Shown here: positions 26,802 through 64,000 of the stretch, one piece after another | Numbering within the stretch: position 1 is the first letter of the stretch | Layout of the letters: each line of letters opens with the position of its first letter | Assembly (NCBI GenBank): GCA_965637545.1 | Contig: OZ281501.1 | Coordinates: 18,910,001 to 18,974,000, forward strand | Length of the DNA stretch: 64,000 nucleotides | Direction of reading: 5' to 3' | DNA from: Phallusia mammillata | Taxonomy: Eukaryota | Position numbers and translations under genes: made by a program | The notes under the pieces: generated by a model | What the model was told of the DNA's origin: nothing | Database searches by the model: none | Seen by the model: only the letters and a program-made list of their open reading frames with translations

Positions 26802-26958
26802 NNNNNNNNNNNNNNNNNNNNNNNNNNNNNNNNNNNNNNNNNNNNNNNNNNNNNNNNNNNNNNNNNNNNNNNNNNNNNNNNNNNNNNNNNNNNNNNNNNN
26901 NNNNNNNNNNNNNNNNNNNNNNNNNNNNNNNNNNNNNNNNNNNNNNNNNNNNNNNNNN
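26802..26958. other. Assembly gap (157 N)
   Basis: Run of N. Confidence 1.
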
Positions 26959-46008: not shown

Positions 46009-49000
46009 ATGGCTGAAAGACGGCGTTTGCGACCCGCAAGAAGTGATAATGAGGAAGTTTTATCAGAAGGAGAATCTCAGGTTCCACACGCTCTCTCGCT
46101 GTCACAGTCGGTAAGATTGTTTGTAGATACATATTTACGTGTATATTGTCTTACTTTATTGCTAATGTTATCATTTTAAATGAGGCTAAAGCAATAACAC
46201 AGACATGCTGCTCTAACAGTTTCTAAAAGTTACTGAAAAGATGTTGTTCCCTTTTTCACTTCAACTACATGTCCTGTACTGTTTATGACTTCATATAAGA
46301 AACTTAAGCAAGAAACATTGCAACTTTATATCTTCCTAGAATAAAAAAAAGCAATAGAAATTCAAAACTTTATGTTTAGTTTGTGTATAACTGGAACTTT
46401 TTTAAGCATGTGTCATTTCATTGTTTGTTTTATTTTTATCCTTGGTTAGTCAGCAATGCCTTATGCTCATGAGAAGTGTTTTATTGCAATTCTGTTGAAT
46501 TATAAGACAGACATAGTTATTGGGGCAAAGAAAAACCGAAATATGCAATTACCTAGATTCAGTCTGTGATAAAACACATTTTTGATTTTGTTTTGAATAA
46601 TAAACCACCACTTATGTGCAGGATGGTGGATCTGAAGGAGGTTATGTTGATCTTTCTGAATATGAAACTGATGAGGATGATTATCATTCACAACATTCAG
46701 TAAGTGAAATTATTCCCATTGCATGCAACATTAAAAAAATGTCTACTTTTCCCTGCACAAAATAACATAACCATATGGAATCTTTGGAACACTATATACG
46801 TCTGTTCATAAGTTTAATGATGAAAATAATTGCCCAAATAACGTTTAAAATATAAAGCAAGTTGCTTTTTACGTGTATTTGGGCCGGCATTTTCACCATT
46901 AAACATATGGAATGTAAAACACAAAATAAAAATGACATGGTAAAAGCTACATATTTATTCATATTGTTTTTCAAATGTATTTTGGTATTCAGAGTGACGA
47001 GGAGGTTGAAGCTCCTCCCGAAAAGTCCCCAGATCAGTTTGAAGATGCAGAGGAAGATGCAACTGGAGTAGAAAGAGGAAGTGGAGACGGGAAGGTAGTT
47101 GGGCTTTGTACTAACTTGTTCCGAAATTTTAAGCATTTAGCTTTAGTCTTAAAAAAGATGATTTCATTGTCAAATAATTCGAGTAGTTTTGTTGTAAACT
47201 TAGTTAATGCTAATTTTCAGTTTGCAATGAACTATCAATATATGCCTAGTTACTGGATTTTACTCTGTAAGGGTTAGGTAAAGATTTCGATGTGCTAAGA
47301 TTTTTTTTCTGCTTTGTAGGAGCAGTCTGACAGTGATTTTGAGCCGAAGAAGAATTTCGTAAATGTGTCCGAAGAAGCAGGTGATCCTGAAGTTAACGAG
47401 GAGGGAGAGGAAGAAAAAGAATCTCCCTGTTTTATTCCGACCAAAGGAAACTTTTTCCAACATGACACACGATCACAAGATGTCAGGGGAGGGTAAGAAA
47501 CTATAGAAATATTTGTAAAAAATAAATGAGCATAAAAGTATATTTGGATGTTTCAATAATTGGTACCAAAAAATATCCAATTCAAGAAAAACATCAAATA
47601 AATATCGGACATTTTTTTGAAAACACATGCATCCAAAGTTTTGAGCATTGGAGAATGAATGATTTCCCAACAATAGGCAGGGTAATGTCTTGGTTTAACA
47701 CCTTTTTTTTTTCTTTGACATTTGCTATTGTCTTGTAAGCAACCAAGCTGTATTTTAAATATATACTGACACTGATAAATTGGAGGTTTAACTTTCTTGT
47801 GAGGAATCATAAGCTTCCTTGTGGAGTAAATTGATTTAGATTGCTATAAATTAAACTACTCACGCCTTTCAAAGTAACACACAGCCTTTATTGTTATGAT
47901 ACCATAGTTAAACATTGTGTTGTTGTTTTGTTACATTGTAGGAGAACCACGGTCAGAAATTTTCGGACAAGACCTGACGCGTCGCGATGGCTGCATGATA
48001 AATTTGATGAAAGAGAACAAACTCCAAAAAGTCGAGAAGATCTTATTGCTGAATATGGTTATGACATCCGAGCACATTCATATGGCAAACCGCCCACAAA
48101 TACAAGAGGGTATGTGAACAAGTAATGAGTAGCTGGTATACACAACAGGCTTTGTAAATTAGATTGTTCAAGAACCGGAAAAATTGTCTGTTTGTTTTGT
48201 AGTTTTTTGTGAGTTTGCTTTACAATGATGGACCAAGTATTTAAAAGAATAATATAAGGTCAAATTAGTTTCTAGACCTCTTATAGTACCACAGAATTTT
48301 TTAAGCTAATGTTCTATAAAAGACAAAAAATAACTCACAGAGACCCAGTTTTATATAGCATTAACCTCAATATTCTCAGTCCAGCAGCCAAGAATTTTGT
48401 CAGTCAATTTTGCATGGAAAATATTTCTGTAATTTATTTCCAGCGGGACAAGAGGTCAACGTCGTCCTTTTGGTCGTCATGACATGAATCGAGAACAACA
48501 TCACTTTCGGCAGCAAAACCACAATGCCAACTCGCATAATAATGATTACGGCAATGGTCAAGCTTGGCCTAGACTTAATAAGGTAAAATCAGGTGCATGG
48601 TACATGGTGGTAAATTTAAAACACTTCCCTATAATCCTGATTTTGTAATGAATAAATCTGCTGATATTGCTATAAAAAACAACATGATTATATTTTTGGA
48701 AGTTTTAACACATAACGACAAAACATTTTAATAGCACTTGGAATCAGTATTTGATTTTGTGGTGTAAGTGTATAACGGTATTTAGTGATAACTTTTCCTA
48801 AGCTTTTGATTACATGTGCATAACAATACCACAGGATTTTTTCATTTACTACAATTTTTGTTGCAGGAAAGACCAAGAGATCGGCAAGCTCCCTCCAACT
48901 ATAGAGATACAACTATTAGGACTCAAGATTTCCGAGCTTCAAGACGTAATTATCTGAGAAATGATCAGAGGGAAAGAGATCAACAATATAGAGGTAGAGG

Positions 49001-52000
49001 TGGCATCCATTTGTTTTTGATTTTCTTGTTGTTTGAACACAAAAATCCCAGACTAAAATTGAGTTGTAGTTGACAAAACAAGATATAGCACACCAGGTTC
49101 ACTTCAGGGCTGATCCCAGCTTTGAATTGATGTTAATCTTAATGGTAGTGCTACTGACGCGGTGCCTCCTAGGAGATCCAAAAGTGCCTAATTTTAAAAA
49201 TGGTATATCTCAAAAAATGCTAACGGTTAGGGCTATTAGGGTCGGGGTAAGGTATTAGCATTTAAAATTCAATAAAACTAACCCAAAAAATTAGTTACTA
49301 ATGTAAAATTTTTAAACATTTGCATCCTAAACCAACCCTCTTTAGCCGCTAAATAAATAATTCAGCTCTTTACGCCACCTATCGAAAATTAAGCACTTTT
49401 GGATCTCCTAGGAGGCACCGCGTCAGTAGCTCTACCAATCTTAACTGATTACAATCTAAATGAGTATTTTCTCCCAAACAATAACCTTTATGGCTTCACA
49501 GAACCAAGACAACCACCCAATCGGCCGAACAGAGCAGATTATTCACAGAAGCCGAGAAAACCGGCAAAAGAAGATCAGGCATCACCACCAGCATCTGATG
49601 AAGAAGAGGTTTTATTGTTTTCTTTTTACACTTAGTTGTCCAGCATGGTTTTATGTCATAAATTACTTAATCGACTGTACAAGTTTTTTTTTTATTATTT
49701 TGTCTGGCTGAAACATGTTTACTTAAAAGAACAAAGCTTTCTGTTGATAAGTAAACTCAGAAATTTAAAAACCAGGTAAAAAAGGTGATATTTGAATTTT
49801 TCACACATGTTTACTGAGAAAATCTGGCAATACTGTATTAGGATTTTCCACAATGTTATGCACAAAATTTTATGGTGATTGTAAAATACACTTTTCAAAT
49901 TTTCAGTGGGATGTTGGTGATCAGGAACGAGAAGAAAAACCTGAAGAGAAACGAAGCTCTCCGATGCACAAAACAAACAAACCAAGTGATTCAAGCAGAC
50001 GTTCACAGCCACAAGCATATTCACAACAGAGGTAGAGGCTTTACAATTTAGTTATGTTGCATTCTGTTTTAAATGTTTACTGTTGTTTAATAGACATGGA
50101 AAGCGAAGTGAGGGCAACATTACTGAAAAGCTGAAGAATATTTCAATTTCACAGTCCAAAGAGGTGAGTCATGATTTAATACATGTCTCAAGGCTCAAAA
50201 AGGACAATAAATACTTTATAATTATTTCTAACAACAAATAAAATTGCATGTGCTCCTTAAAACTTGTAGCATTACTTTTTTATCGGTGTTACAGTTTGTT
50301 ATGGGTCCCCTTCCATGAAGGGGACACATATTGTTTTTGTCTATATTTTTTTTTTCTTTTTTCTTTTTTTCTTTTTTCTTTTTTCTTTTTTTCTTTTTTT
50401 CTTTCTAACGCAGATTTGTTCCCACGTTTTGTTCAACAAAGAATGGTTCAAACTTTTTCAAATTTACACACATTACAGATATTGGTCTAAAGATGGTCCA
50501 TGTGAATTTTGACCCCGTTTGATCCCTCGGTTCACCCACAGCCCCCCAAAACGTGAAATTTTTAGCGCGGATTTGTTCCCACGTTTTGGTCAAGAAAGAA
50601 TGGTTCAAAGTTTTTCAAATTGACACACATAATAGGTATTGGTCTAAAGATGGTCCATGTGAATTTTGACCCCGTTTGATCCCTCGGTTCACCCACAGCA
50701 CCCCAAAACGTGAAATTTTTAGCGCGGCTATTGTTCCCACGTTTTGGTCAAGAAAGAATGGTTCAAACTTTTTCAATTTTACACACATTACAGATATTGG
50801 TCTAAAGATGGTCCATGTGAATTTTGACCCCGTATGACCCAGAGATTCACCCACAGGCCCCCGAAACGTAAATGTGTCTAACGCTCGTTTGGTCAAGAAA
50901 GACACTGTAGGCAGAAGTACCAAGAGAGTAACTCACTGGTTTACGATAGCGGGAGGGCTCAGCTTGACGTCGGACAGACGTTTTACGAGACATCGTTTCA
51001 GTGATTAGAAATCAGCTGTTTTGCACAGCAATGCTATGTCGTTTTATTAAGTTATCACTCACATTTTTAGTTTTGGCGAAGGTTTTACACCTATGACGTG
51101 ATTTAAGCCTAATAACCGTGCTTCGGTTTTGTATATGTCAAGAAAAACTTTGTTAATAAAAGTTAAGATGAAAAAATTAACTTGACTTTTTTGCCAAATA
51201 AATGTTTTTTTAAATGCTCGCTGTCAGGTTGGCCGCCGCATGATCACGGGTTACTTAAGGTCAACTTGTCGGTATTACAAACACAGCTCAGAACTTTCTT
51301 CATAACGTAGCGTTTTTTTAACAATCAATTTAGGAGTCAATACTCAAGGCATGTATAAATTAGGCTTAACAGTATTGTTGAACACGAATGACGGCGTGCT
51401 ATTGAAAACGGTGTCAAAAGGTCAAACAGTCGTTTGGCGTGTGCACCCTGAGAGGTTACTACAGGTCAATGGTACTCATTTTGCGAAACAAAGTTATATG
51501 AAAAACAATTTGTTATGTATACACTTGTAGCAAATTGCTTTTTAATTTAAAGTGTCTGTAACACAACTGTTACAGCTTTCTCAAAAAAATTGCCCGACCT
51601 TGGAGGACTATATCTGGGTTAAAGCAAGAGATTAGATTAAAGTCTTTGTTACGTTTTTTTAATGTTTTTGTAATTACATGACAATAATAGTGCAAAAAGA
51701 ATACGAACAATTTTTTTTATTGTTGGGTTAATGCTTTCTAAAAATTTGTCCTTAAGAATGTAAAAATCACCGCAACATTTGTTTACCGTAAATCCGCACA
51801 AACATGCGTGTGGGGACCCATTAGTTTTTGTTTACAAAAACAATCATATGTGTAGATCAAATGATGTGTATAGTAAATTGGTAAATATCGTATAGAATAT
51901 ATAAAATGGAAGTATATCAGAAAGCCACTCTTCTAGTTATGAGTACATTTCAGCTTGACCTTGAAATATAACTTTGTAGCAGCCACGGAGATACTCATCG

Positions 52001-55000
52001 TTGCGACAGAGAAACGCTGACTCCCCTTCAGAACCAGCGAGACCCCAACATTACCCTCCTGCCCCAACTTTACCCCCAGAGTGGACAAAGAAAAGGGAGG
52101 GTCAGTTGAAACCTAACAGAGGTCAGTGAAATAAATGTTGTTTCGTATTTTAAGCAGCACTTCGCATGGAATCAATATGTTTGCCCTGTCAAACAAACAA
52201 GTTTCATATCTTCCTGTGTTTTCCATATACAGTACTTTTATTTGTCCCTGGAAATTAAAACAGCAGAAAAAAACCCTTGGTATTTGGGTCTTACTCATTT
52301 TTACTCTTTGGCCTGTTTTTATAAATTTGACACACTTTTGCCACTTGTATCCACAGCTGTGCCTTGCATATCATTATCAAAATTACAATTTTTGCCACCA
52401 CTGTGGCCCAGTAAACTTTTCACGAGAGCTAAAACATTTTTTTGAGCCTTTTACTGCACAACAATTATCTCAGTACTTTATTTTACCAAGAAACTCCAAC
52501 CCAGCCATCACCTGCAGTCCAATCGAACCACATCCAACAAAGCACACCGACACCAGATCGACCTACAGAACCAACACAGAATGAAATGCTCATGGCATCG
52601 TATATACAACAGCATCATCAACAGCAACAACACCAAGCTACTCCACCACCTGCCCCTGTTTCCATGCCAACAGCAGTGCCATACAGCATAGGTATGGGTT
52701 GCTAGGCCCAATGAACCACAGGAGAATTCTAGTACACAAGATTGTACACTAGCTTTGCTTAAACGGTTTTTCACAGGCTTGTGGGTCAAATTTTGTTGCC
52801 AACTTAGTATCTAGCATTTAATGCACAGAAAAGTTTAACTGAGATTGATTGTACAACATGTGTTAAAACAGATGATTTATTCAAAAAGCATTACTGCCAT
52901 AGGGCTTATGTATAGAGACCACATCATAGTGCAGAGGTTTGGTCAACCTGCACTATGATGACAAGAGCGATTGTTAAAATGTCTGCATTAAGATGTATTC
53001 TATATGTTTTTGCTTTTCACGATGATATGCAGTAAAACTTGGTTAAACCAGATTCGGTTAACCTGGATCTTCACATAATATAGTTTGGACAAAACTAAGG
53101 TACAGATGATTTGTAATGTGGTAAGACTTGAATTAATCGACATCGGTTAATTCGGATCACTGGACAAATTGTCTGGTTCAATCGGGTTTACTAAGGTTTA
53201 GTGTATTTGTTCGTAAACTCTATTTCAATTCTTTCGTGAGCTCTTGCATCAGTGTGAAAGGTGTGTTACAGCATTACTAAAAAGTTGATGATTTGTTTCA
53301 GCCGATTTCAGTTCACCTGCTTTGGAACTACCCAAGAGTGATCAGTCACTGTTGCCCGACAACGCAAGTATTTCCTCTCAAATGCAGTGGTATGAAAGTA
53401 AGTACACCTAACCAGGCAATTCTCTTGGTAAAAAATTAAACAATAAGTAAACAGATCAAGTTTTGTAGCTGTTCAGCCTTGATTTAATGCCCAGTAAACA
53501 TTGAGTAGTTTTGCACATGTATTCCAGCAAAGGCAGTGGTGGGATTCAGCCGGTTCGCACTGGTTCTATAAAACAGTCTCACGAAATTTTATGAGATCAG
53601 CGAACCGGTTAGCATTACTGGTTACTGTCAATGGACTTTTTGTAACAGAACTGGCTGAAAAATATGACTTTTATGACAGAACCGGCTGAAAAAAATTTGA
53701 ATCCCACCACTGGCTGTTGGCAATTCTAAAATTTTGCTGAGTTTTTCACAATGACTTTGTATTACAGCTGCAATGGCTTACCAAGCAATGCTGACACAGA
53801 ACGTCCTGAACCATCCCCCACCACCTACTTTACCCCCATTGTTGCCACAGCAACCATCAATCTTGTCGAATCTGCCCAATCCTGAACAAGTATGTTGAAG
53901 ATTTATTGTGTGTTTCACATCAGTAAAAATAGTTGTATGACGAAGTTCGCACTGCTCACTAAATTTTTACAAAACATATGAATTCAAATTGTTAGCTCAC
54001 TATGCTCTTTTAACTTTATCGCCCACATTCAGGTTAGAATTTTTGCTGATGTGCATTGCATGACTGAGTTGGCACTGTGATGCTCACTGAATTTTACAAA
54101 ACAGCTGGTGCTGAGCACTGCAACCCAGGGTTAGGACTGCGGAATAAGAGAAACAACTACAAGCAATTTCTATTGAAAATATTGGCAAACATTGTTATGT
54201 TTAATTATAATAAAACCATTTGTATTCCACCTCACTGAACATTGTGGCGAAGTGGGCAGTTTGGTTCGTTAACATTTAATAATTTGTTGTTGTTTTTTCA
54301 GGTTGGAACCCCAGGATTGTTAGTGGGTGAAGAGCAAAAAAACCCACAAGCCCAGTTACCCCTTGTATCGCAGGCTGGAACCCCTGGTAATCAAAACTAT
54401 AGCCACTTGTGGTCACTGGGTGTCACTAAAGGTATATGTAATATTCTTTCAGATATTGGAGCTCTTGGTTCTTTGGCATTTCCTCCACCTTTACCACACA
54501 ACTTTCAAAATGAATTCATGCAAAGGTAAAACAAACTTAAGGTTTTGTTGGTTGTGGCAAAGAAATATCAACGTTGTGTTAATTTTCGAAATCTGCCATA
54601 GTATTGCATCCAGGATTGAGGAGTCAGTAAAAAAAATCTGACTCCAATGCCATTTTAAAATTTTCCAGCTTTGAACTCTCTAACGTCTAACCAAAAACAA
54701 AGCATTTGTGTTGCGCTTGCACATTTCATTGCTTTTTTATCAAAATGGACCAAAAGTCAGATTGGCCAAAAAATGTAAAGACTCAAACCCCATAATATTT
54801 TGAAAAACTACGACTTTAAAACCCCTTACAGCGACTTTGTTGAATTGTTTTGATAACCCTGCTTTCATTGATTACAGAAACTTGATGTCGGAACGCCCGA
54901 TGGCTCCACCGATGCAGGTCCCATTCTCTCACACCCCTGGTCTCCTGGGTCAGCAAGTTGGAGGGGTAACCTACTACGCAAACCTGCCCCACTCTGTACC

Positions 55001-55100
55001 GATATCCGGGGTTCACAACATGATCCCGGGAAACACCCAGATTGGGTCACCGCTCCGCTCAGCCAATTCTGCTATTCCTATAAGGCCTCCGATGGAATGA
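46009..55100 (+). CDS. CASC3: Exon-junction-complex protein CASC3/MLN51/Barentsz
   Basis: Exons 46009-46110, 46622-46699, 46993-47094, 47320-47492, 47942-48109, 48444-48582, 48867-48993, 49502-49608, 49907-50031, 50094-50163, 51980-52100, 52491-52691, 53302-53397, 53768-53889, 54302-54386, 54453-54525, about 54878-55100. Motifs: MAERRR start, Btz/SELOR domain PCFIPTKGNFFQHDTR and RWLHDKFDEREQTPKSREDLIAEYGYDIR, PRRYSSLRQR, C-terminal GGVTYY...AIPIRPP. Confidence 0.93.
49143..49437. mobile_element. MITE with about 45-bp TIRs and a 7-bp TSD
   Basis: TIR TGGTAG(T/A)GCTACTGACGCGGTGCCTCCTAGGAGATCCAAAAGTGC. Flanked by ATCTTAA on both sides. Telomere-like GGTTAGGG motifs inside. Superfamily unclear. 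Confidence 0.85.
50417..50900. repeat. About 157-bp tandem repeat x3 in a CASC3 intron, preceded by a T/C-rich run (50348-50405)
   Basis: TGTTCCCACGTTTTG recurs at 50417, 50574 and 50732. Confidence 0.9.
53030..53203. mobile_element. Tigger/pogo-like MITE
   Basis: CAGTAAAACTTGGTTAA...TTACTAAGGTTTAGTG(TA). Reverse-complement homolog of 38225-38409. Confidence 0.6.
53534..53712. mobile_element. hAT MITE (CAGTGGTGGGATTC family)
   Basis: Both TIRs are intact. No recognisable TSD. Confidence 0.8.
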
Positions 55101-55545
55101 CAGGCCCATGGGGCTCCTGGGGAATCCCTTACGAACCCAGTAGTTTTGCCGTAAAACGGGTAAACTGTGCCGTTAGGCATCGCAGCAACTAAGTTTTATA
55201 ACCATTAAGTGCGATCATTATCTGGCGGTTGTTTCTTGCGAGAATTTGTTTGTGCCTTACTCGAGTTTCGAGGCACTTTGTTCGTTTCTGGCTGTTTTTG
55301 TTGATTCTAGCATCGCCATTGTTTCGTAATAAACGTGGAAGTCACGACCAACGCCAACGTGGCGATTTTCAAAAAGAACGATTGTTTATTGTCAGTGTGT
55401 AAAATTTAAAAAATGGGGGGTTGTAACGGTGTGACTTTGTTGTAGCGAAATGTACCAAAGTAGGTTTACAAACACTTTTTTGGTTCTAATTTCACTGGCG
55501 GCCGCACATGCGTCTACTAAATGAAAGTTCCTTCAATGTCTAAAT

Positions 55546-55619
55546 CGGTGGTTCTCAACCATGGTCTTACAGGCTTACATGAAGGGGGGGCATGGTCCAC
55601 GAAAGGTTGAGAACCACTG
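55546..55619. mobile_element. 74-bp minimal Charlie-like MITE
   Basis: C(G/A)GTGGTTCTCAACC TIRs with perfect TSD GTCTAAAT. Confidence 0.85.
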
Positions 55620-56267
55620 GTCTAAATGAAAATTCCTTCAGTTATATGCGAACATCTAACTAAACGTACGGTTGTGCACCACATGCCTCCAATTTAAGCT
55701 CCGACATTTTCATATATCAAACTTCATGTGACATAAGACAAACAACATGAAAGAATTTTACAAAAACTCAACGAATTGCAGTACCAGTTACTGTCAGAAA
55801 CACTTTGGCACTTCAATTTAATACATCACCACAAACCAGCAGGCCAGACAGCGAGCTGCAATTACGTTGAATTTACAACGGGTAATAAATATATACGAAC
55901 GGTCGAGTGTTTTCTTTCATAACATGCTGTGACGCCAGCTAAAATTACTTCACTCTCTGTAAATTGCAGCACATAAACTTGCTAGTTAAGAGCAAATTAT
56001 ATTGTTGGAGATCTTTACAATCAATTTAAACCCACGCAAATGGCTGTTGTCGTTTTTGTTTCGTAATTTTGAAAGTTGTCCAAATTATGCCCAACCAAAA
56101 ATATGCAAAAAACTACTTCAAAATAAATCATGACCTTTTGGCATTACTATATTTAAATTATGTTCATAATGACGTCTTTTCAACAAAATTCTACAAAAGA
56201 TTTACATAAATACTGAGGAAATTGATCATAGCAATCGAAGAGATGCCAAACTAGTCATGGCTCTGTA

Positions 56268-56629
56268 AGTTCACTAAGAGGTCTACCAGGTCAAACAGAC
56301 TAATTAGATAAGCTCTCCACAGCTAAGTACGCACTAATTGATGCAAAATACTTTTCCCGTACCAACCCACGAGTCACATTAGCACTCAACTTTCGGCGAA
56401 CCCGGTTACTAAACTTATTCAACACGATTTTAGCCTCACAGTTCAGCGAAACTATCACAGTATGTAATCAGTTCCGGTACAGCCAACTTTTCCAGCTGTT
56501 GTCCTTAAGGTGACCTTGCAAATCCCGGCAAAGTCTCCACACTTACGGTCATCACCGCACAAATTCCACAAGGTTACGTCAAGGTGACTTAGAGGTTACA
56601 GCAACAAACAACTGCAAGGTCCAAGGTCG
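56268..56629 (+). promoter_or_regulatory. Cluster of nuclear-receptor half-sites, including DR5-spaced pairs, upstream of RAR
   Basis: AGTTCActaagAGGTCT (56268-56284), AGGTTAcgtcaAGGTGActtagAGGTTA (56571-56598), AGGTCCaAGGTCG (56617-56629). Confidence 0.4.
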
Positions 56630-59543
56630 TTTATGAGTCACAATACCATACCTCGTGCGTCATAATATCCTATTTTTCCCGGAAATTTGCGGGTTAGGTA
56701 CTTTGTTACTAGAAGAACTCATCAAGCCGTATTTACTTGTCAAACTTAAAATGTTTGCGTTTTGGGCTTCCCTTTGTGTACGTTTAGCTGTAAAGCCAAG
56801 TCTACTATATGTTGTTCTACACTTCAACGAGTTTTAACACTATGTTTTACGTATACACATTGGAAAGGAAATTTTTCTTAAGTTGTATGTTGAATGTACA
56901 CAAAAAGGTGAAAGCTGCCAGCAGTTCATCATTTAAATTTACATAAATATCACGTAGAAGGGCAATGTACAGAAGGCAAGTAGTAGTACGTTTAAGAGCA
57001 CCATGTACATACTACAGTCACAACTGAGCTGAAGTGCTACCTACGTGCACAAATAATTTGAATGATTGATGCTCCGGCCAGCGCGGCGGTCGCAGAAAGG
57101 TCACACCACTTTCGCATCGCGGAACCGGGGTGAACCAAAGTTTACAGCGTCAGTGAAACAACAGCCAGACTGCTGTAAACCACGCTTGTACCGTTTGTTT
57201 ATCCTGAAATCACAGAGACAATTTGTTGTGTAGTATTTACAACTGACTACAGTAGGTGCTGGTTTTAGTGCAGGGTTTTGTTGTCAGTGTTGCAATGCGG
57301 TGTGAAGGGGACAGATTTTATGCTTCCTGTGTGTCAGCCTGAGGTTACACACTGTCACTGGCAGTTCGCGCTGATCTACCGCACGAACTCTATGAGGGGA
57401 TTTTTCTGGCTTCAAAATTACATGTTTCTGCAGTTCAGGACCTTTTAGGCTTTTAGCCCGCGCCTGAAACTTGGTTCGGTGTAAAAATTTGGAATAAAAC
57501 CGAAAACTGGAGGATTTTTATGTTAGTTAAGTCTTGCAGCCGCAGGTGCAATGCAACATTAGTTTTGTTCAAAAGTGTTTTAGTGGGACAATGTATGGTA
57601 TTGCTGTGTTATGTTCATGTTTTGTGAAATAGACTTGTTGTGTTTGTGGATGTATATTATATGTCTCCTTAGACATGAGCCGTTTTTCAAAAGATTTTGT
57701 CATTGTTATCAAATGTTCAAAGTCAAAAATGTTTATAATTTAGGGATGCTACTGTAAATTTTAGGCCTGAAAAAGATTGTTGTGGTGATTCAAAAGTTTG
57801 CGTGTCAAGCAATTATGACAAACAATAGCGTGGTACTTTCCCAATGTGTAAACCCCATAGATTTTAATTGCGGATTTACTCGGCTATTGTAACTGTCGTT
57901 TAATTAGAAGTGCGTTAATTATACATAGTGAAACATGCTTTTTATAATAAATGTGTCGTTCAGGCTGCAACATATTTTCTTATGATTCCTCTAAATTGCG
58001 CTGCAGAGACTTTACGATTTTGAAGGGGGTACTTACGTAAAATTTAATTCGTTTATTGTACAAATAGATGTAAGTAACAAAACTTGGATTGAAAGTCATA
58101 GTTTTAACGCGATTGTATCTTGTTTTCTGCCATTTGTATCTCAAGTCATATCTGAAACAGATCACACTTGACATTCGCCTCATAACATCGATATTTCGAA
58201 ACGGAAAAGTCAGGTCTTTCATCCTGTCCGACGCCGATCTTATTGTGCGATAGCGAGGTCGTCTCAGGCAGAATATATCCCCCTACGCAGTCTGTAGAAG
58301 TCTGGTGCGGAGGTGGTACATTTTATAGTTGAAGTGCACGGTCTTAGTCATGTTATGACAGACCCGATGTTGCGCAGGATAAGATAAGGAACTCAACAAT
58401 TTTTTTGGGGAGATGAAAGGTTGAGTGTTATTTGGTTACAAAGATTCAGAGGCAGTTTTTTCTCCGGAACAGATTTTCGATTTCGTGTTTTGTGTCAGTT
58501 TTGTGGACGTTTTATGTGTTAAAAATATTGGCTTGCAGCAGACAAAAAACTGTGAAAAAGTGGCGTTAATGTGTTTTGGGATCAGAACTTTGAGGTTTTA
58601 ATTTGTATTGATCGCTTAGGGTGGTTTGTGACTATTGTCCAATTTGTTTTTCAAGACATTGTGTCTAATCCGAAAACACGAAATTTGCAATGCAATGCAA
58701 AAGCGTAAATTACGTGTTAGAACGAATTATTAAGTATTGATTTTTGTCCGTAATAATGAAATGTTGACGTAAAGCAGTTGAACCTTTGTGTGCTGAAACT
58801 GTTGGAAAACAGAATCAGTCAGTTCTAGGTAAATAAAGTTTACAATTGGCCTAATTGGCATCACCCCTATATTCCAAAATATTCGTTGAAAATCTCATCT
58901 ACGTTTGCATACTAACTCAATTCTATTTTGTTTTTCTGGTTTATTTTAACGCAGCAAATTTGGTCTGGTTATCAAACAATGGAATGCATAATTTCTGACC
59001 AACAACATTTCAAACATTACTCCACATCCAGTTCACCAGCTATTGTTTACTGTGACTTGGTGAGTACAGATTCGATTCTGTTAAGATGTACGCTTACTTT
59101 CACTTGTTTGACATTTGCCCGCTTTATGTGTTGTCTGATATTTTTAAAAACGTCTTTTAAACAAAGGTTTCCACAAATATTGTCATTAACGGCGAAGTAA
59201 TGGCAATGTTTAATGCCATTGGATATAATCAAATTTCTTTTAGTTAGGTCGCTCTTTAAGTTTGTGTGTTCCCAATTTTTTATAAACAATTGCAATAGAT
59301 TTTACAAGATATTATGTAGTCTAATAGCGCTTTCGTGTTTTCGGGGCGAAATATATAAATATTTGTTACAACGAGATCAGACAACTGTGTTGCGGGACAA
59401 ACCGAAACCCAAAACAATCAAGTTCGTAACATCCGAATATAGTTACAAGTGTGTAGAGTTGTGAATTAAACTGAAACCAATATGAACCCACGCAACTTAA
59501 ACTGACACAAAACAATCAGTTCGCCTAAAGTTGAACACAAACA

Positions 59544-59793
59544 ATGACCTGTCGTCCCTCGCGATTCGGATTAACAACAATCGTATCAGCGCACGTGTTC
59601 GGTTCAACGGGCGGACATCGACTAACACGACCCGATCACTTGTTTCCGCAGCAGGGCGCCCCCTGTCGATCGCCCCCCAAACAACACGCGATGACGTCAC
59701 CGCACACCCATCACGTGACCTACGTTGACCTTGACAGGTTCGGAACCCATGTGACCGGAAGTTTCGCACTCGATTTCGGAAAACATTTCTCAT
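59544..59793 (+). CDS. RAR: Probable first coding (A-region) exon of RAR
   Basis: ORF from ATG 59544 ends at a strong phase-1 donor (T|GTGAGT). The phase matches the acceptor at 60913. No homology recognised in this exon itself. Confidence 0.5.
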
Positions 59794-60913
59794 GTGAGTT
59801 TTTGTTTGTTGTTTTAAAAATTTCGTGTACTTGGTTTTGTTTAAAACGATTTGACAAAGTACTGACCTGTATTCAAAATATTCTATATTGGAAACGGTAG
59901 ATAACTTGTGTTTAGAGAAAACTTAAACTGTTTGGTGCTGTTAGTTTTATCTTCGAAGCCACAACACAATGCGAACTTGAGCGGGGTCAAAGCTCCGGTA
60001 TGCTTTGCCCAAGGGCATATTGAATGTACTGCATCCTGTCGTATAACTAGGACATGGTTAATGGCAGCGTATCGTCGTGGAAGTTGACGTCAACACAGTT
60101 CTGTATAAATCTTACACAGAAAAGAGTTGGTTATACCAAAAAATCATAACCTTGACATACCATACATTGTTGTAGTTTGATAATAACCTTACCAATTGTC
60201 CAATGTCGATAAACACAAATAATCATCATGAGTTTGTTGTGAAAATGCTTAAGTTTAAAAGCAAAGAATCATTCAGTGGTATGTTTTTGGCTGGAGCAAT
60301 TTACAAATTCGAATATCACTAACCATTTGCATTACAAAATATGAGAACAAACAAGCGCCTGGTCCAGCTATTACTTCATATGATCGACCCACAATAAACG
60401 CAAACATGCGTAAAACAAAGCTGTGACAATGCAACCAAAGTTTATGTCAACAAACCGCGTTTAGGTTTCTGTATTCATAAACTGCAGTTTAAACTGAGGA
60501 CACAGGCTATATCATGTCAATAACATGTCAGTGTTTGCATTGATACTCGGCATTACAATATTGCTGGCGGGTAATATGGAGACATTTACTACGTCACTTG
60601 TCTGCAAAGATCCGGATTAAGCCAAGTGACCTTTACATGACATTGTAGTGACGAGTGCAAATCATAAATTAAAGGAAGTGCACGCTTCGTTACGCGAACT
60701 GAACCTTCCATTTAACAAACGACTTGTTCTTTTCAGTGAAACGCCATTCAGGGGCATTGTTATGTCACACAAGCATTGAATGGATGCAAACAACCTCATT
60801 TGGTTTCTTTAGTAACCTTGGAGTGAACCAGAATTACGTCACTGGAATTTAAATTTTTGCTTTCCACAAAATGACGTAATCGATAGAACACAGCATTATG
60901 TTTTGACAACCAG

Positions 60914-61119
60914 CTTATGACGTCATAATGTTATGTGCAGCGTCACAATCGGACGGAGGCAGTATCTGCTCGAGCGGAACGACTTCTGATTACGAGGCAG
61001 TGGGATGCGTGACGTCACCGGACTCACCGCTGCCACCGCGTGTCTACAAGCCGTGTTGTGTTTGTGGAGACAGATCGTCGGGTTATCACTATGGTGTGTC
61101 TTCATGTGAGGGATGCAAG
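60914..61119 (+). CDS. RAR: Retinoic acid receptor, exon with B region and first zinc finger (rest of the gene lies beyond the window)
   Basis: [35 protein letters not shown] followed by a phase-0 GT donor. This is the RAR signature [29 protein letters not shown] with its conserved intron. Confidence 0.92.
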
Positions 61120-62899
61120 GTAATGTGCGAAATTCACTGTGGTGGAATTATACATAGAAAATACCGAAAAAGTGTTTCGTCCACCAGGTTGCATATTTAA
61201 CAAATTTGTCTTTAATACGAAGTTATTAACAATAATGGGATTATGTATGTCGGCTGGCCTCATGAAAATTGTAGAAGAACACCAGAAAGGCTTAAGATTT
61301 TTTACGATATTTTTTGCCAGACATAGTTATTTATAGACTTTCCTTTTTAACTGAAACGGCGAATATAAAAAAATCATCCGGCTAAACGAAACGAAAAAAC
61401 ATGTTGTATGCCTAGGAATGGCACTATCTTATTTTGCCTAAAGAAGAACTTAGACTTAAACTTGAAAGTGGGTTTAGTGGTCGAAAAAGTCAAACAAATT
61501 TGTGGTTCGGGTGACGTAATGCACCGTGTCCATACAAGGTAATGTCAAACCACTCTTAACATTTTGTACTGACCATAACAACAAAAAATCTGTTCAAGTA
61601 AACATATTCACTATTTTCAAACTCTCTGGAAGTTACGATTTTGTATCAGCCATTTTTTTATGGTTTGCAACACGGTTTTATTTAAAACTTTCGAAACCTC
61701 AATTTGCGACAATAATATATGAAAACCTTTAACTTTATTGTTTACATGGTACTGTCACAGTGGTGAGTAATGTCAAAAATTAAAAGGTTTACGTCAACTT
61801 ATTCAACAAAATAAAATTTAATTTGGTTGCAGATTGGCAAAACCACAATTTGTAAAACAATTTCCTTTTACAAGATTTGGCACATTTTAAAATGCGTAGA
61901 CTAGATTAGATTTCCAATAAAACTTTCCCATCACTTACCCCCATGTTTTAAATTAAATTCCCGTGCGAGTTAAGATTAAAACGAAGATTGGAAGGGCACG
62001 GAAGGTTCAGAAAACAAGCGATAAACTCCTTTTCAATTTCCAGCAATTTCGCTTTCACCCGACCTGTGGTCGTGAAACAGAGTGAAAATAAAACAATAAA
62101 TTTTAGTTGGGCGCAAGTAAAGTGGTAATAAAATTGCATGCTGACTTTATTCAATTTCTTATTACTTCGCAGTGATCACTCGAGTTACCTTAATTTGAAT
62201 AGAAATATTGAAGGTTTGAATTCACAAAACCACTTGCTCGCTGTAAATACCCGATTTATTGAGGCAAGGCACTGAACTAACCCTGTTTGGGAGGGAGAGA
62301 TTTTTACTTGCCTTGCAATCGTGGCAAATTGCAGAAACGGCTGTTTATACGTTGCATTAAAATTGCCAAAAATCGTTTTTTAAAGAAATTTTCTTGTTAC
62401 TCAGTACCACTGGTATGAGAGAGGGCCTATATATTTTAATTTTCTTACTGTTCTGTATTTAAACGAATTTTCAGGTGCAAAGAAATGCGATCAGTGCTTT
62501 CAGTGTCACGCGAGCTTCCAAAACATTTCAGAAATACCTCAAAAACCAATTTTCGTGGAAACACAGACCGCCTTGTGGCCATTATGTCTGAACCACGAAC
62601 AAATTTAGTTTTCTTTGCCACAAACTGTCTCAAGTACAAGATCCCGGGCAGATAAAATCTCAAATCAGCAAAAAGTTTCAGCTTCAAACAAACCCTTGGT
62701 GGCCACTGACAACCGGGTCACGTGGTTGATGACGTGTGAGGGAATGACGTAATGAGGCGATTAAGAGAAAAACAAAATTCATTTTAAATGTTGATGGTTA
62801 AAGTTTTTATTGCAACCCAGCGGTGGAATTCAGTTGTTAAGTGTTTACAACATTTGAATCGGCAACAGGTGACAGCGCTCTGCGCACAAGGCCATCTCA

Positions 62900-62941
62900 A
62901 GGTCAAACCGACCTCAGCTCTCAACGACCTCTGTCTGACCT
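62900..62941 (-). promoter_or_regulatory. Candidate intronic DR5 RARE with adjacent IR3
   Basis: Minus strand AGGTCAgacagAGGTCG (62925-62941). Plus strand AGGTCAaacCGACCT (62900-62914). Confidence 0.5.
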
Positions 62942-63260
62942 TGCTATCCCTTACATGACTGTCAACTACTGAAAGGTTGTGTTGAACCTAAAACACGAAA
63001 CATTTTATACGCGAAACCACAAAGCAACTAGAAAGTGATTGCGCTCTGATATTACTTTCCACGGTTTGGGATTACATGCTTCTTAACTTGCTGACAAAAC
63101 GCACAGCACACGCAATTTCCAAACTTAAAAATAAACATACATAGTTTGATGAACTTATTAAAACTGAATTGCACACCGATGTATATCAGCTTTGGCGCTG
63201 CATTCTTAAACTGAGGTTTTGAGACTCTTTATCTTGGTAATCAACATGAAGCGGAAGCTG

Positions 63261-63673
63261 AACCTTTTACACTACCCACAGCGGTACATGACCCGGGGTT
63301 AAACCTTTTACACCACCCACAGAGGTACATGACCCGGGGTTAAACCTTTTACACCACCCACAGAGGTACATGACCCGGGGTTGAACCTTTTACACCATCC
63401 ACAGCGGTACATGACCCGGGGTTAAACCTTTTACACCACCCACAGAGGTACATGACCCGGGGTTGAACCTTTTACACCATCCACAGCGGTACATGACCCG
63501 GGGTTAAACCTTTTACACCACCCACAGAGGTACATGACCCGGGGTTGAACCTTTAACACCATCCACAGCGGTACATGACCCGGGGTTAACCTTTTACACC
63601 ACCCACAGAGGTACATGACCCGGGGTTGAACCTTTTACACCATCCACAGCGGTACATGACCCGGGGTTAAACC
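63261..63673. repeat. 41-bp minisatellite x10 with an 82-bp dimeric higher-order pattern; units carry DR5 motifs
   Basis: Unit AACCTTTTACACCA(C/T)CCACAG(A/C)GGTACATGACCCGGGGTT(A/G). The two variants alternate from unit 3 onward. Confidence 0.95.
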
Positions 63674-64000
63674 TGTGTTAGCACACCACCATGCGGTTAA
63701 AACTGGCATGATATTTGCGAAATATCGTGTTAAAAATCATGTTTGTTATGTCAGTGAGCTTGTATGCCGTAAATACAATACAAGGATTAAAATTGCAAGA
63801 CTTTTTGCAAACTAGCTTCCACAAAATTGCTTAACATACGGATTTTAGTGCGATGTACGTTACAAAAAGTATTTTTTAATTCGAATTTTTCTTGTATAAG
63901 GCAATTTCATACCTGCCAAAAAACGTGTTTTTGTGTTTGTTTCGTTTCCGTATCAAAAAATACCTTTTTAACGGTTTTAGATTCATCTAACCGTTCAACA

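What the first reader, a model, noticed from the sequence alone, without database searches (positions are those of the whole stretch)
63261..63673. Minisatellite in the RAR intron is a tandem array of DR5 retinoic-acid response elements
Seen: on the minus strand, alternate units read GGTTCAaccccGGGTCA, a full RGKTCA-n5-RGKTCA match, at 63371-63387, 63453-63469, 63535-63551 and 63616-63632. Five other units carry a one-mismatch GGTTTA version and one is a DR4-like variant. Known: the 5' half-site GGTTCA is the same as in the vertebrate RAR-beta2 RARE. Under uniform base frequencies a perfect DR5 is expected about 0.1 times in 64 kb on both strands. The four copies count as one event, but it falls inside RAR itself. 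Inference: a copy-number-tunable autoregulatory enhancer, a VNTR rheostat for RA feedback. I do not know of this being described.
Basis: partly seen in the sequence, partly recalled or inferred. Interest (0 to 1): 0.75.

Follow-up and report, generated by a model that had tools for sequence, protein, structure and literature searches.

The report
Repeat array with receptor-binding motifs
A short DNA stretch repeated ten times inside a sea squirt's retinoic acid receptor gene does carry four textbook docking motifs for that receptor, but they are copies of one recent event in a young, probably length-variable repeat absent from a related species, so a regulatory role is possible but unproven.

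Summary
At 63261-63674 there is a 41-bp x 10.1 minisatellite with four perfect DR5 motifs on the minus strand, at the stated coordinates (0.11 expected per window).

The "RAR intron" claim also holds. An RNA contig splices exon 60941-61119, an RAR-type first zinc finger, to a second-finger exon that lies beyond the window. The array therefore sits 2.1 kb into the intron that splits the DNA-binding domain.

In two other individuals its core has 1.6x and 3.8x single-copy depth (3.6x in the reference), which also suggests length polymorphism.

The four perfect sites are one event. Units alternate in two types, and only one type carries the G that completes the motif. An 82-bp dimer was amplified four times.

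The only long orthologous contig I could fetch has a 1.3-kb intron with no DR5 and no array. No binding or RA-response data exist.

In favour of function, receptor half-sites are enriched across the 5' part of this gene, and the exon keeps the residues that vertebrate RAR uses on DR5.

My odds are about 0.6 neutral young VNTR and about 0.25 real RA-responsive enhancer.

Earlier notes of this scan report conserved DR5 sites in "the RAR gene" 11 Mb away on the same chromosome. That is different DNA, and the relation between the two loci is unresolved.

The parts
63261..63674 (.). Minisatellite: 41-bp unit, 10.1 copies. Units 3-10 form four 82-bp dimers of two alternating unit types.
   Evidence: TRF, unit search, unit alignment.
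63371..63387 (-). Perfect DR5 (GGTTCA n5 GGGTCA), copy 1, at the junction of units 3 and 4.
63453..63469 (-). Perfect DR5, copy 2, at the junction of units 5 and 6.
63535..63551 (-). Perfect DR5, copy 3, at the junction of units 7 and 8.
63616..63632 (-). Perfect DR5, copy 4, at the junction of units 9 and 10.
63576..63591 (-). DR4-like variant made by a 1-bp deletion at the end of unit 8.
60941..61119 (+). RAR-type exon: end of the A/B region plus the first zinc finger. It has a cag acceptor and an AAG|gtaatg donor.
   Evidence: An RNA contig of run X7 covers it at 100% and runs on at both ends into other exons. The best PDB matches are RAR gamma, beta and alpha. Pfam zf-C4. Sequence.
59588..59793 (+). 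5' exon spliced to the DNA-binding exon. The 3' end at 59793 (CAT|gtgagt) is exact. The 5' end is only inferred from the 206 nt of contig that lie upstream.
61120..64000 (+). Intron between the two zinc-finger exons. It runs off the window, because the second-finger exon is not in the window.

Best explanation
This is a young, locus-specific and probably length-polymorphic intronic minisatellite. It grew by replication slippage or unequal exchange inside the intron that splits the DNA-binding domain of an expressed RAR-type gene. The 41-bp unit ends in TGACCC and begins with AACC, so every head-to-tail junction gives a DR5-like arrangement on the minus strand. In most junctions outside the dimer core the upstream half-site reads GGTTTA, one mismatch. 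One unit type carries a G that makes it GGTTCA, a perfect match. The 82-bp dimer of that unit and its neighbour was then amplified four times. The four perfect DR5 motifs are therefore one substitution plus three duplications. Most likely they are a by-product of the repeat with no selected role. Shown here: the anatomy, the intronic position, the single-locus status and the absence from one relative. Inferred: neutrality.
For: (1) Units 3-10 alternate strictly between two types that differ at three linked positions, and only one type carries the G. Three of the four dimers are identical, and the fourth differs by one substitution and one 1-bp deletion, so the amplification is recent. (2) Six of the ten junctions carry a disrupted motif, so the motif is not kept across the array. 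(3) L001 is the only long orthologous contig. Its exon is 79% identical in protein and 80.5% in DNA. Its second-finger exon lies 1.29 kb after the first, and its 20.6 kb hold no DR5, no tandem array and nothing alignable outside the exon. (4) DNA contigs of two other individuals break at the array edges. The core collapses into one 111-nt unitig (82 + k - 1) at 1.6x and 3.8x the flank depth, against a multiplicity of 3.63 in the reference. That fits a single variable locus. (5) A DR5 event somewhere in a gene of 40-60 kb is expected by chance in roughly 7-10% of cases, from 0.11 per 64 kb. (6) There are no flanking inverted repeats, no Rfam match and no ORF, and the RNA depth over the array is like that of other intron sequence.
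Against: (1) The motif is a perfect consensus. (2) The exon keeps the P-box and the pre-finger Arg, Lys and Tyr that vertebrate RAR uses to pair with RXR on DR5 (PMC7515732). (3) A tunicate RAR transactivates with all-trans RA (PMC1500811). (4) RGKTCA half-sites outside the arrays are enriched across 51000-63255: 44 against 25.8 +/- 4.7 in shuffles, with 0 of 300 shuffles reaching 44. Their density is 2.6x that of the rest of the window, and 0 of 20000 random hexamer sets match this. This gene therefore looks like a nuclear-receptor target. (5) Earlier notes of this scan, unchecked by me, report conserved DR5 pairs in another RAR locus of the same genome. (6) Only one relative could be compared, and it is distant.
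Confidence: 0.6

Rival explanations
1. The array is a working RA-responsive intronic enhancer. RXR/RAR heterodimers occupy the four perfect DR5 sites, and perhaps weakly the imperfect ones. They raise transcription of the receptor gene when RA is present, and dimer number sets the strength.
For: (1) Perfect DR5 motifs. (2) RAR-type P-box and DR5-interface residues are conserved in the exon 2.1 kb upstream. (3) A tunicate RAR is RA-activated. (4) Half-sites are enriched over the 5' part of the gene. (5) A stretch 300-600 bp upstream of the array, 62700-62945, is rich in motifs: an E-box, two TGACGT sites and an inverted pair of TCAAGGTCA-type sites. The RNA run also has a low-level contig there. 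(6) The repeat is not dispersed, and its copy number appears to vary. (7) RAR autoregulation through DR5 is established in vertebrates; this point rests on my own knowledge.
Against: (1) There are no binding, chromatin or reporter data. (2) The four sites are a single mutational lineage. (3) Half of the units are disrupted. (4) There is no counterpart in L001. (5) Ciona embryos are reported to respond weakly to RA, with only one validated RARE (PMC3227721). (6) The array lies downstream of the first zinc-finger exon, so it cannot be an internal promoter element of the vertebrate P2 kind.
Confidence: 0.25
2. The array acts through something other than RAR. It could be another RXR partner or a monomeric nuclear receptor on the GGGTCA/GGTTCA half-sites. 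It could be a factor that binds the CACCC-type or CAGCGG-type parts of the unit. It could also be a pre-mRNA element, since the unit is transcribed within the intron.
For: (1) All ten units keep an intact GGGTCA half-site. (2) The locus is most enriched in the AAGGTC(A) extended half-site typical of monomer-binding receptors, with 10 of the 13 window sites lying in 51-63 kb. (3) The array is present in RNA contigs at intron-like depth.
Against: This is motif fishing in a 41-bp unit, since any unit will match something. The unit itself has no AAGGTCA. There is no conservation and no special RNA signal.
Confidence: 0.1
3. The repeat is part of a dispersed transposon or satellite family and only happens to lie in this gene.
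For: Such families are common in ascidian genomes. A very high-copy element fragment does lie in the same intron, at 61151-61215.
Against: (1) The core unitig has only 1.6x and 3.8x single-copy depth in two individuals, against about 460x for the element at 61151-61215. (2) No extra contigs at 85% likeness or more were laid on the array. (3) There is only one copy in the window. (4) There are no terminal inverted repeats.
Confidence: 0.03

Closest known systems
Vertebrate RAR beta2 (also alpha2 and gamma2) DR5 autoregulatory RARE
   Same: It is a DR5 of RGKTCA half-sites within the receptor's own gene. The upstream half-site GGTTCA is the one I recall from the beta2 element (own knowledge). 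The receptor here keeps the residues used on the Rarb2 DR5 (PMC7515732).
   Different: The vertebrate elements are single, conserved, promoter-proximal sites of an internal promoter upstream of the shared DNA-binding exons, and they have been shown to work. This one is a young tandem array 2.1 kb downstream of the first zinc-finger exon. It is not conserved in the one relative compared, and it is untested.
VNTR enhancers whose units carry transcription-factor sites (for example the insulin, MAOA and prodynorphin VNTRs; own knowledge)
   Same: It is a tandem array near or inside a gene in which copy number sets the number of factor-binding motifs. Copy number probably varies between individuals here as well.
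   Different: For those VNTRs, expression effects were measured. Here nothing has been measured. Full-text searches found no paper that describes such a repeat array: one search returned a single paper on another subject, the other none that pairs VNTR with these motifs among those listed.
Repeat-borne nuclear-receptor elements (DR2 elements in Alu; own knowledge)
   Same: Repetitive DNA supplies direct-repeat half-sites as a by-product of its own sequence.
   Different: Those elements are dispersed transposon copies. This is a minisatellite at a single locus.
Ordinary intronic minisatellites of ascidians and lancelets
   Same: Unit length, higher-order dimer structure, sharp edges, recent homogenisation and likely length polymorphism all match. 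Earlier notes list several other minisatellites in this genome.
   Different: Only the coincidence of motif and host gene sets this one apart.

Membership tests
Minisatellite / VNTR | Head-to-tail copies of a 10-100 bp unit | tested here: met
   Period 41, 10.1 copies, 93% matches.
Minisatellite / VNTR | A single locus, not a dispersed family | tested here: met
   The core unitig has 1.6x and 3.8x flank depth in two individuals, and the contigs break at the same edges.
Minisatellite / VNTR | Copy number varies between individuals | tested here: inconclusive
   Depth ratios are 1.6 (X3) and 3.8 (X4) against 3.63 in the reference. These come from contig depths, not from reads that span the array.
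Retinoic acid response element (functional DR5 RARE) | Two RGKTCA half-sites in direct orientation, spaced by 5 | tested here: met
   Four exact matches.
Retinoic acid response element (functional DR5 RARE) | Bound by the RXR/RAR heterodimer | not testable with these tools
   There are no binding data. Only the conservation of the receptor's DNA-reading and DR5-interface residues could be shown.
Retinoic acid response element (functional DR5 RARE) | Confers RA-dependent transcription | not testable with these tools
   This needs a reporter assay or a deletion.
Retinoic acid response element (functional DR5 RARE) | Conserved at the orthologous position in related species (usual for validated developmental RAREs, not strictly defining) | tested here: not met
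   The orthologous intron of L001 is 1.29 kb with no DR5 and no array, and its whole 20.6 kb holds no DR5. This is one distant relative only.
RAR (NR1B) gene as host | C4 zinc finger with a CEGCKG P-box and the RAR-type pre-finger PPRVYKPC | tested here: met
   Sequence. Pfam zf-C4 at 5.7e-08. The five best PDB matches are all RARs: RAR gamma at 7.8e-16 against RXR at 6e-08. Every hit in the protein searches that carries a receptor family name is an RAR; the other named hits are generic labels.
RAR (NR1B) gene as host | Expressed and spliced to the second zinc finger | tested here: met
   A 1512-nt contig of X7 runs on after the exon into sequence that reads GFFRRSVQKN. That sequence is not in the window.
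RAR (NR1B) gene as host | RAR-type ligand-binding domain, and orthology to the single RAR of other ascidians | not tested
   The rest of the gene lies outside the window. Earlier notes place another RAR gene 11 Mb away, so one-to-one orthology is open.

The most novel reading that the evidence does not exclude
A length-polymorphic minisatellite whose dimers each add one perfect DR5 acts as a copy-number-dependent, RA-responsive enhancer inside the receptor's own gene. Individuals would then differ heritably in the gain of RA feedback.
Probability: 0.2. Interest if true: 0.7.

Novelty: new member of a known kind. Interest (0 to 1): 0.3.

Why it matters
If the array were bound and RA-responsive, it would be a natural allelic series. 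It could be used to ask how the number of response elements sets the gain of a nuclear-receptor feedback loop, in an animal where reporter electroporation is routine. It would also show a response element born from a minisatellite. As the evidence stands, it is an ordinary young intronic VNTR that carries a suggestive motif. The more solid gain is a mapped piece of gene structure: an RAR-type exon and intron confirmed by RNA. The second gain is the finding that nuclear-receptor half-sites are enriched across the 5' part of this gene.

Tried and rejected
1. Dispersed repeat or transposon origin: rejected by contig depth, by the single copy in the window and by the absence of terminal inverted repeats.
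2. Structured RNA: no Rfam match in 59000-64000.
3. Coding repeat: no ORF of 70 aa or more crosses the array.
4. Decayed older units in the flanks: by eye both flanks looked like degenerate units. Local alignment against shuffled flanks does not support this (left 301 of 500 shuffles as good, right 38 of 500), so I dropped the idea.
5. Fetching this locus from other assemblies by its exact ORF: nothing on record.
6. More orthologous introns. The profile-free search of 1.84 billion representatives gave one close relative (P0001, giving L001). Two word-index searches gave nothing closer. L002 and L003 are short metagenome contigs where only the exon aligns.
7. Organism B (run X13) holds only the dispersed element and one short intron piece, so it gives no conservation test.
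8. Look-ups of earlier findings by sequence came back blank.
9. Literature precedent for a minisatellite of RAREs: none found in the held library.
10. I searched the exon alone, by reference.
11. The N run at 26802-26958 was left alone.

Full report
**What is there.** The stretch 63261-63674 is a clean tandem array with period 41, 10.1 copies and 93% matches. A search with the consensus unit finds ten copies here and none elsewhere in the window. Dinucleotide shuffles expect 0.11 per window.

**Anatomy of the array.**
- Aligning the units shows that units 3 to 10 alternate strictly between two types. The types differ at three linked positions.
- Only one type ends in the G that turns the minus-strand half-site GGTTTA into GGTTCA.
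- The array core is therefore four copies of an 82-bp dimer. Three dimers are identical. The fourth differs by one substitution and one 1-bp deletion.
- The two leftmost units and the right edge carry the A version.
- The four perfect motifs are one nucleotide state carried along by three dimer duplications, and six of the ten junctions hold a disrupted motif.
- The flanks are not significantly similar to the unit. I had thought by eye that they were, and I dropped that idea.
- There are no flanking inverted repeats, no Rfam match and no ORF of 70 aa or more across the array.

**Is it in an RAR intron? Yes.**
- The ORF at 60928-61200 holds a first zinc finger with the RAR-type pre-finger and P-box. 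It matches Pfam zf-C4.
- The five best PDB matches are all RARs, with RAR gamma at 7.8e-16 against RXR at 6e-08. Every hit in the large protein searches that carries a receptor family name is an RAR; the other named hits carry only generic labels.
- Run X7 carries a 1512-nt contig that covers this exon at 100% identity and runs on into unlike sequence at both ends. It was laid on 60941-61120, but base 61120 is a G that fits the intron start and the next exon equally well, so I place the donor after 61119.
- On the upstream side it continues into sequence that ends at 59793, at a CAT|gtgagt donor. On the downstream side it continues into sequence that reads GFFRRSVQKN, the start of the second finger.
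- That downstream sequence is absent from the window. The exon is therefore expressed and spliced, the intron starts at 61120, and the array begins 2141 bp into it.
- I searched this exon alone, by reference.

**Is the repeat dispersed? No.**
- I laid Logan contigs of two other individuals (X3, X4) on 60700-64000 at 85% likeness. The single-copy contigs stop at 63305 and resume at 63645.
- The core is represented by one 111-nt unitig, the length expected for an 82-bp cycle at k = 31.
- Its depth is 39.1 against about 24 in the flanks of X3 (1.6x). In X4 it is 33.1 against about 8.7 (3.8x).
- In the reference, the same k-mers occur 3.63 times on average.
- A fragment of a dispersed element in the same intron (61151-61215) reaches about 11,900 in X3, roughly 460x.
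- The array is thus a single-locus repeat present in at least three individuals, and its copy number probably varies. These are contig depths, not reads that span the array, so I call the polymorphism likely rather than shown.
- The RNA run holds the array unitig at a depth of 4.7, similar to another intron piece at 3.6 and far below the exon at 52.6. This looks like pre-mRNA.

**Conservation.**
- A search of 1.84 billion representative proteins with the 59-residue exon gave one close relative, P0001, at 83% identity.
- P0001 lies on a 37.8-kb contig of an ENA metagenome assembly, fetched as L001. L001 carries the same unusual CCVCGDR finger.
- In L001 the second-finger exon follows after only 1.29 kb.
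- The 20.6 kb of L001 contain no DR5 and no comparable tandem array. Nothing outside the exon aligns to 49000-64000 of the window, either as DNA or as translated ORFs.
- Two further word-index searches found nothing closer. Two short metagenome contigs align only in the exon.
- The array is therefore lineage-specific as far as can be seen. This rests on one fairly distant relative.

**How unlikely is it?** A random 41-bp unit arrayed in tandem holds a perfect DR5 with probability about 9e-05. The fair question, however, is how often any DR5 event falls in a gene of 40-60 kb. From 0.11 per 64 kb, that is roughly 7-10%. This is suggestive, not compelling.

**What speaks for function.**
- The exon keeps the Arg, Lys and Tyr that in the crystal structure of RXR-RAR on the Rarb2 DR5 form the heterodimer interface, together with the base-reading P-box (PMC7515732).
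- A tunicate RAR transactivates with all-trans RA (PMC1500811).
- RGKTCA half-sites outside the two tandem arrays are enriched across 51000-63255: 44 observed against 25.8 +/- 4.7 in dinucleotide shuffles, with 0 of 300 shuffles reaching 44. Neighbouring regions are depleted.
- The four half-site hexamers are 2.6 times denser there than in the first 49 kb. None of 20,000 random sets of four hexamers reaches that ratio.
- Among hexamers seen at least eight times there, the most enriched is AAGGTC. Ten of the 13 AAGGTCA sites in the window lie in 51-63 kb, with unrelated flanks.
- A perfect AGGTCA-n4-AGGTCA sits in the 5' exon at 59716-59731, and no shuffle produced one.
- This gene therefore looks like a target of nuclear receptors in general, which raises the prior for the array somewhat.
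- On the other side, Ciona embryos are described as responding weakly to RA, with a single validated RARE (PMC3227721).

**Verdict.** The best-supported reading is a young, locus-specific and probably length-variable intronic minisatellite whose DR5 motifs are a by-product (about 0.6). A real RA-responsive, copy-number-dependent enhancer remains possible (about 0.25). Another binder or a pre-mRNA role gets about 0.1. A dispersed repeat is nearly excluded. I found no description of a minisatellite made of RAREs in the held literature, so the idea would be new if true. Nothing here shows that it is true.

**Open puzzle.** The organism name, Phallusia mammillata, comes from earlier notes of this scan. 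I did not verify it independently. Those notes also place "the RAR gene", with a long A/B exon and conserved DR5 pairs, 11.15-11.18 Mb before this window on the same piece. In the DNA contigs, no second exon copy at 85% likeness or more was laid on 60941-61119. A review states that most bilaterians have one RAR (PMC7827873). I could not decide whether this genome has two RAR-type genes.

Noticed in passing
window 59716-59731 (-): A perfect DR4 (AGGTCA, 4-bp spacer, AGGTCA) with a TCAAGGTCA-type extension lies inside the 5' exon that the RNA contig splices to the DNA-binding exon. No dinucleotide shuffle of the window produced one. It is absent from L001.
   Followed up: partly
window 51000-63255: Nuclear-receptor half-sites (RGKTCA) are enriched over the 5' part of the RAR-type gene: 44 against 25.8 +/- 4.7 in shuffles. 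Their density is 2.6x that of the rest of the window. AAGGTC is the most enriched hexamer among those seen at least eight times there, and 10 of the 13 AAGGTCA sites in the window fall here with unrelated flanks.
   Followed up: partly
window 61151-61215: A fragment of a very high-copy dispersed element lies in the same intron. Its contig depth is about 11,900 against 26 for the flanks in X3. It is also present in the second organism of run X13.
   Followed up: no
window 62651-62971: A motif-rich intron stretch lies 300-600 bp upstream of the array. It holds CACGTG, two TGACGT sites and an inverted pair of CAAGGTCA sites at 62898-62943. The RNA run has an isolated 321-nt contig here at depth 3.6 with no spliced ends. 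It may be a regulatory module, or simply pre-mRNA.
   Followed up: partly
window 50402-50873: A second tandem repeat (157 bp x 3) lies upstream of the RAR-type exons, next to a long T-rich tract. Each unit carries three RGKTCA half-sites, and copy 3 has a DR4.
   Followed up: no
earlier notes, 11.15-11.18 Mb before this window on the same piece: Earlier notes describe another RAR gene with a long A/B exon and conserved DR5 pairs. This window holds a separate, expressed RAR-type first-finger exon with a different layout. Either the genome has two RAR-type genes, which would be unusual for an invertebrate chordate, or part of the assembly is duplicated.
   Followed up: partly
L001 10091-11700: In the relative's contig, the two zinc-finger exons are 1.29 kb apart, against more than 2.88 kb here. 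The second-finger exon is unusually divergent for an RAR.
   Followed up: no
window 60870-61015: Several TGACGT motifs, including palindromic TGACGTCA sites, cluster just before and inside the DNA-binding exon.
   Followed up: no
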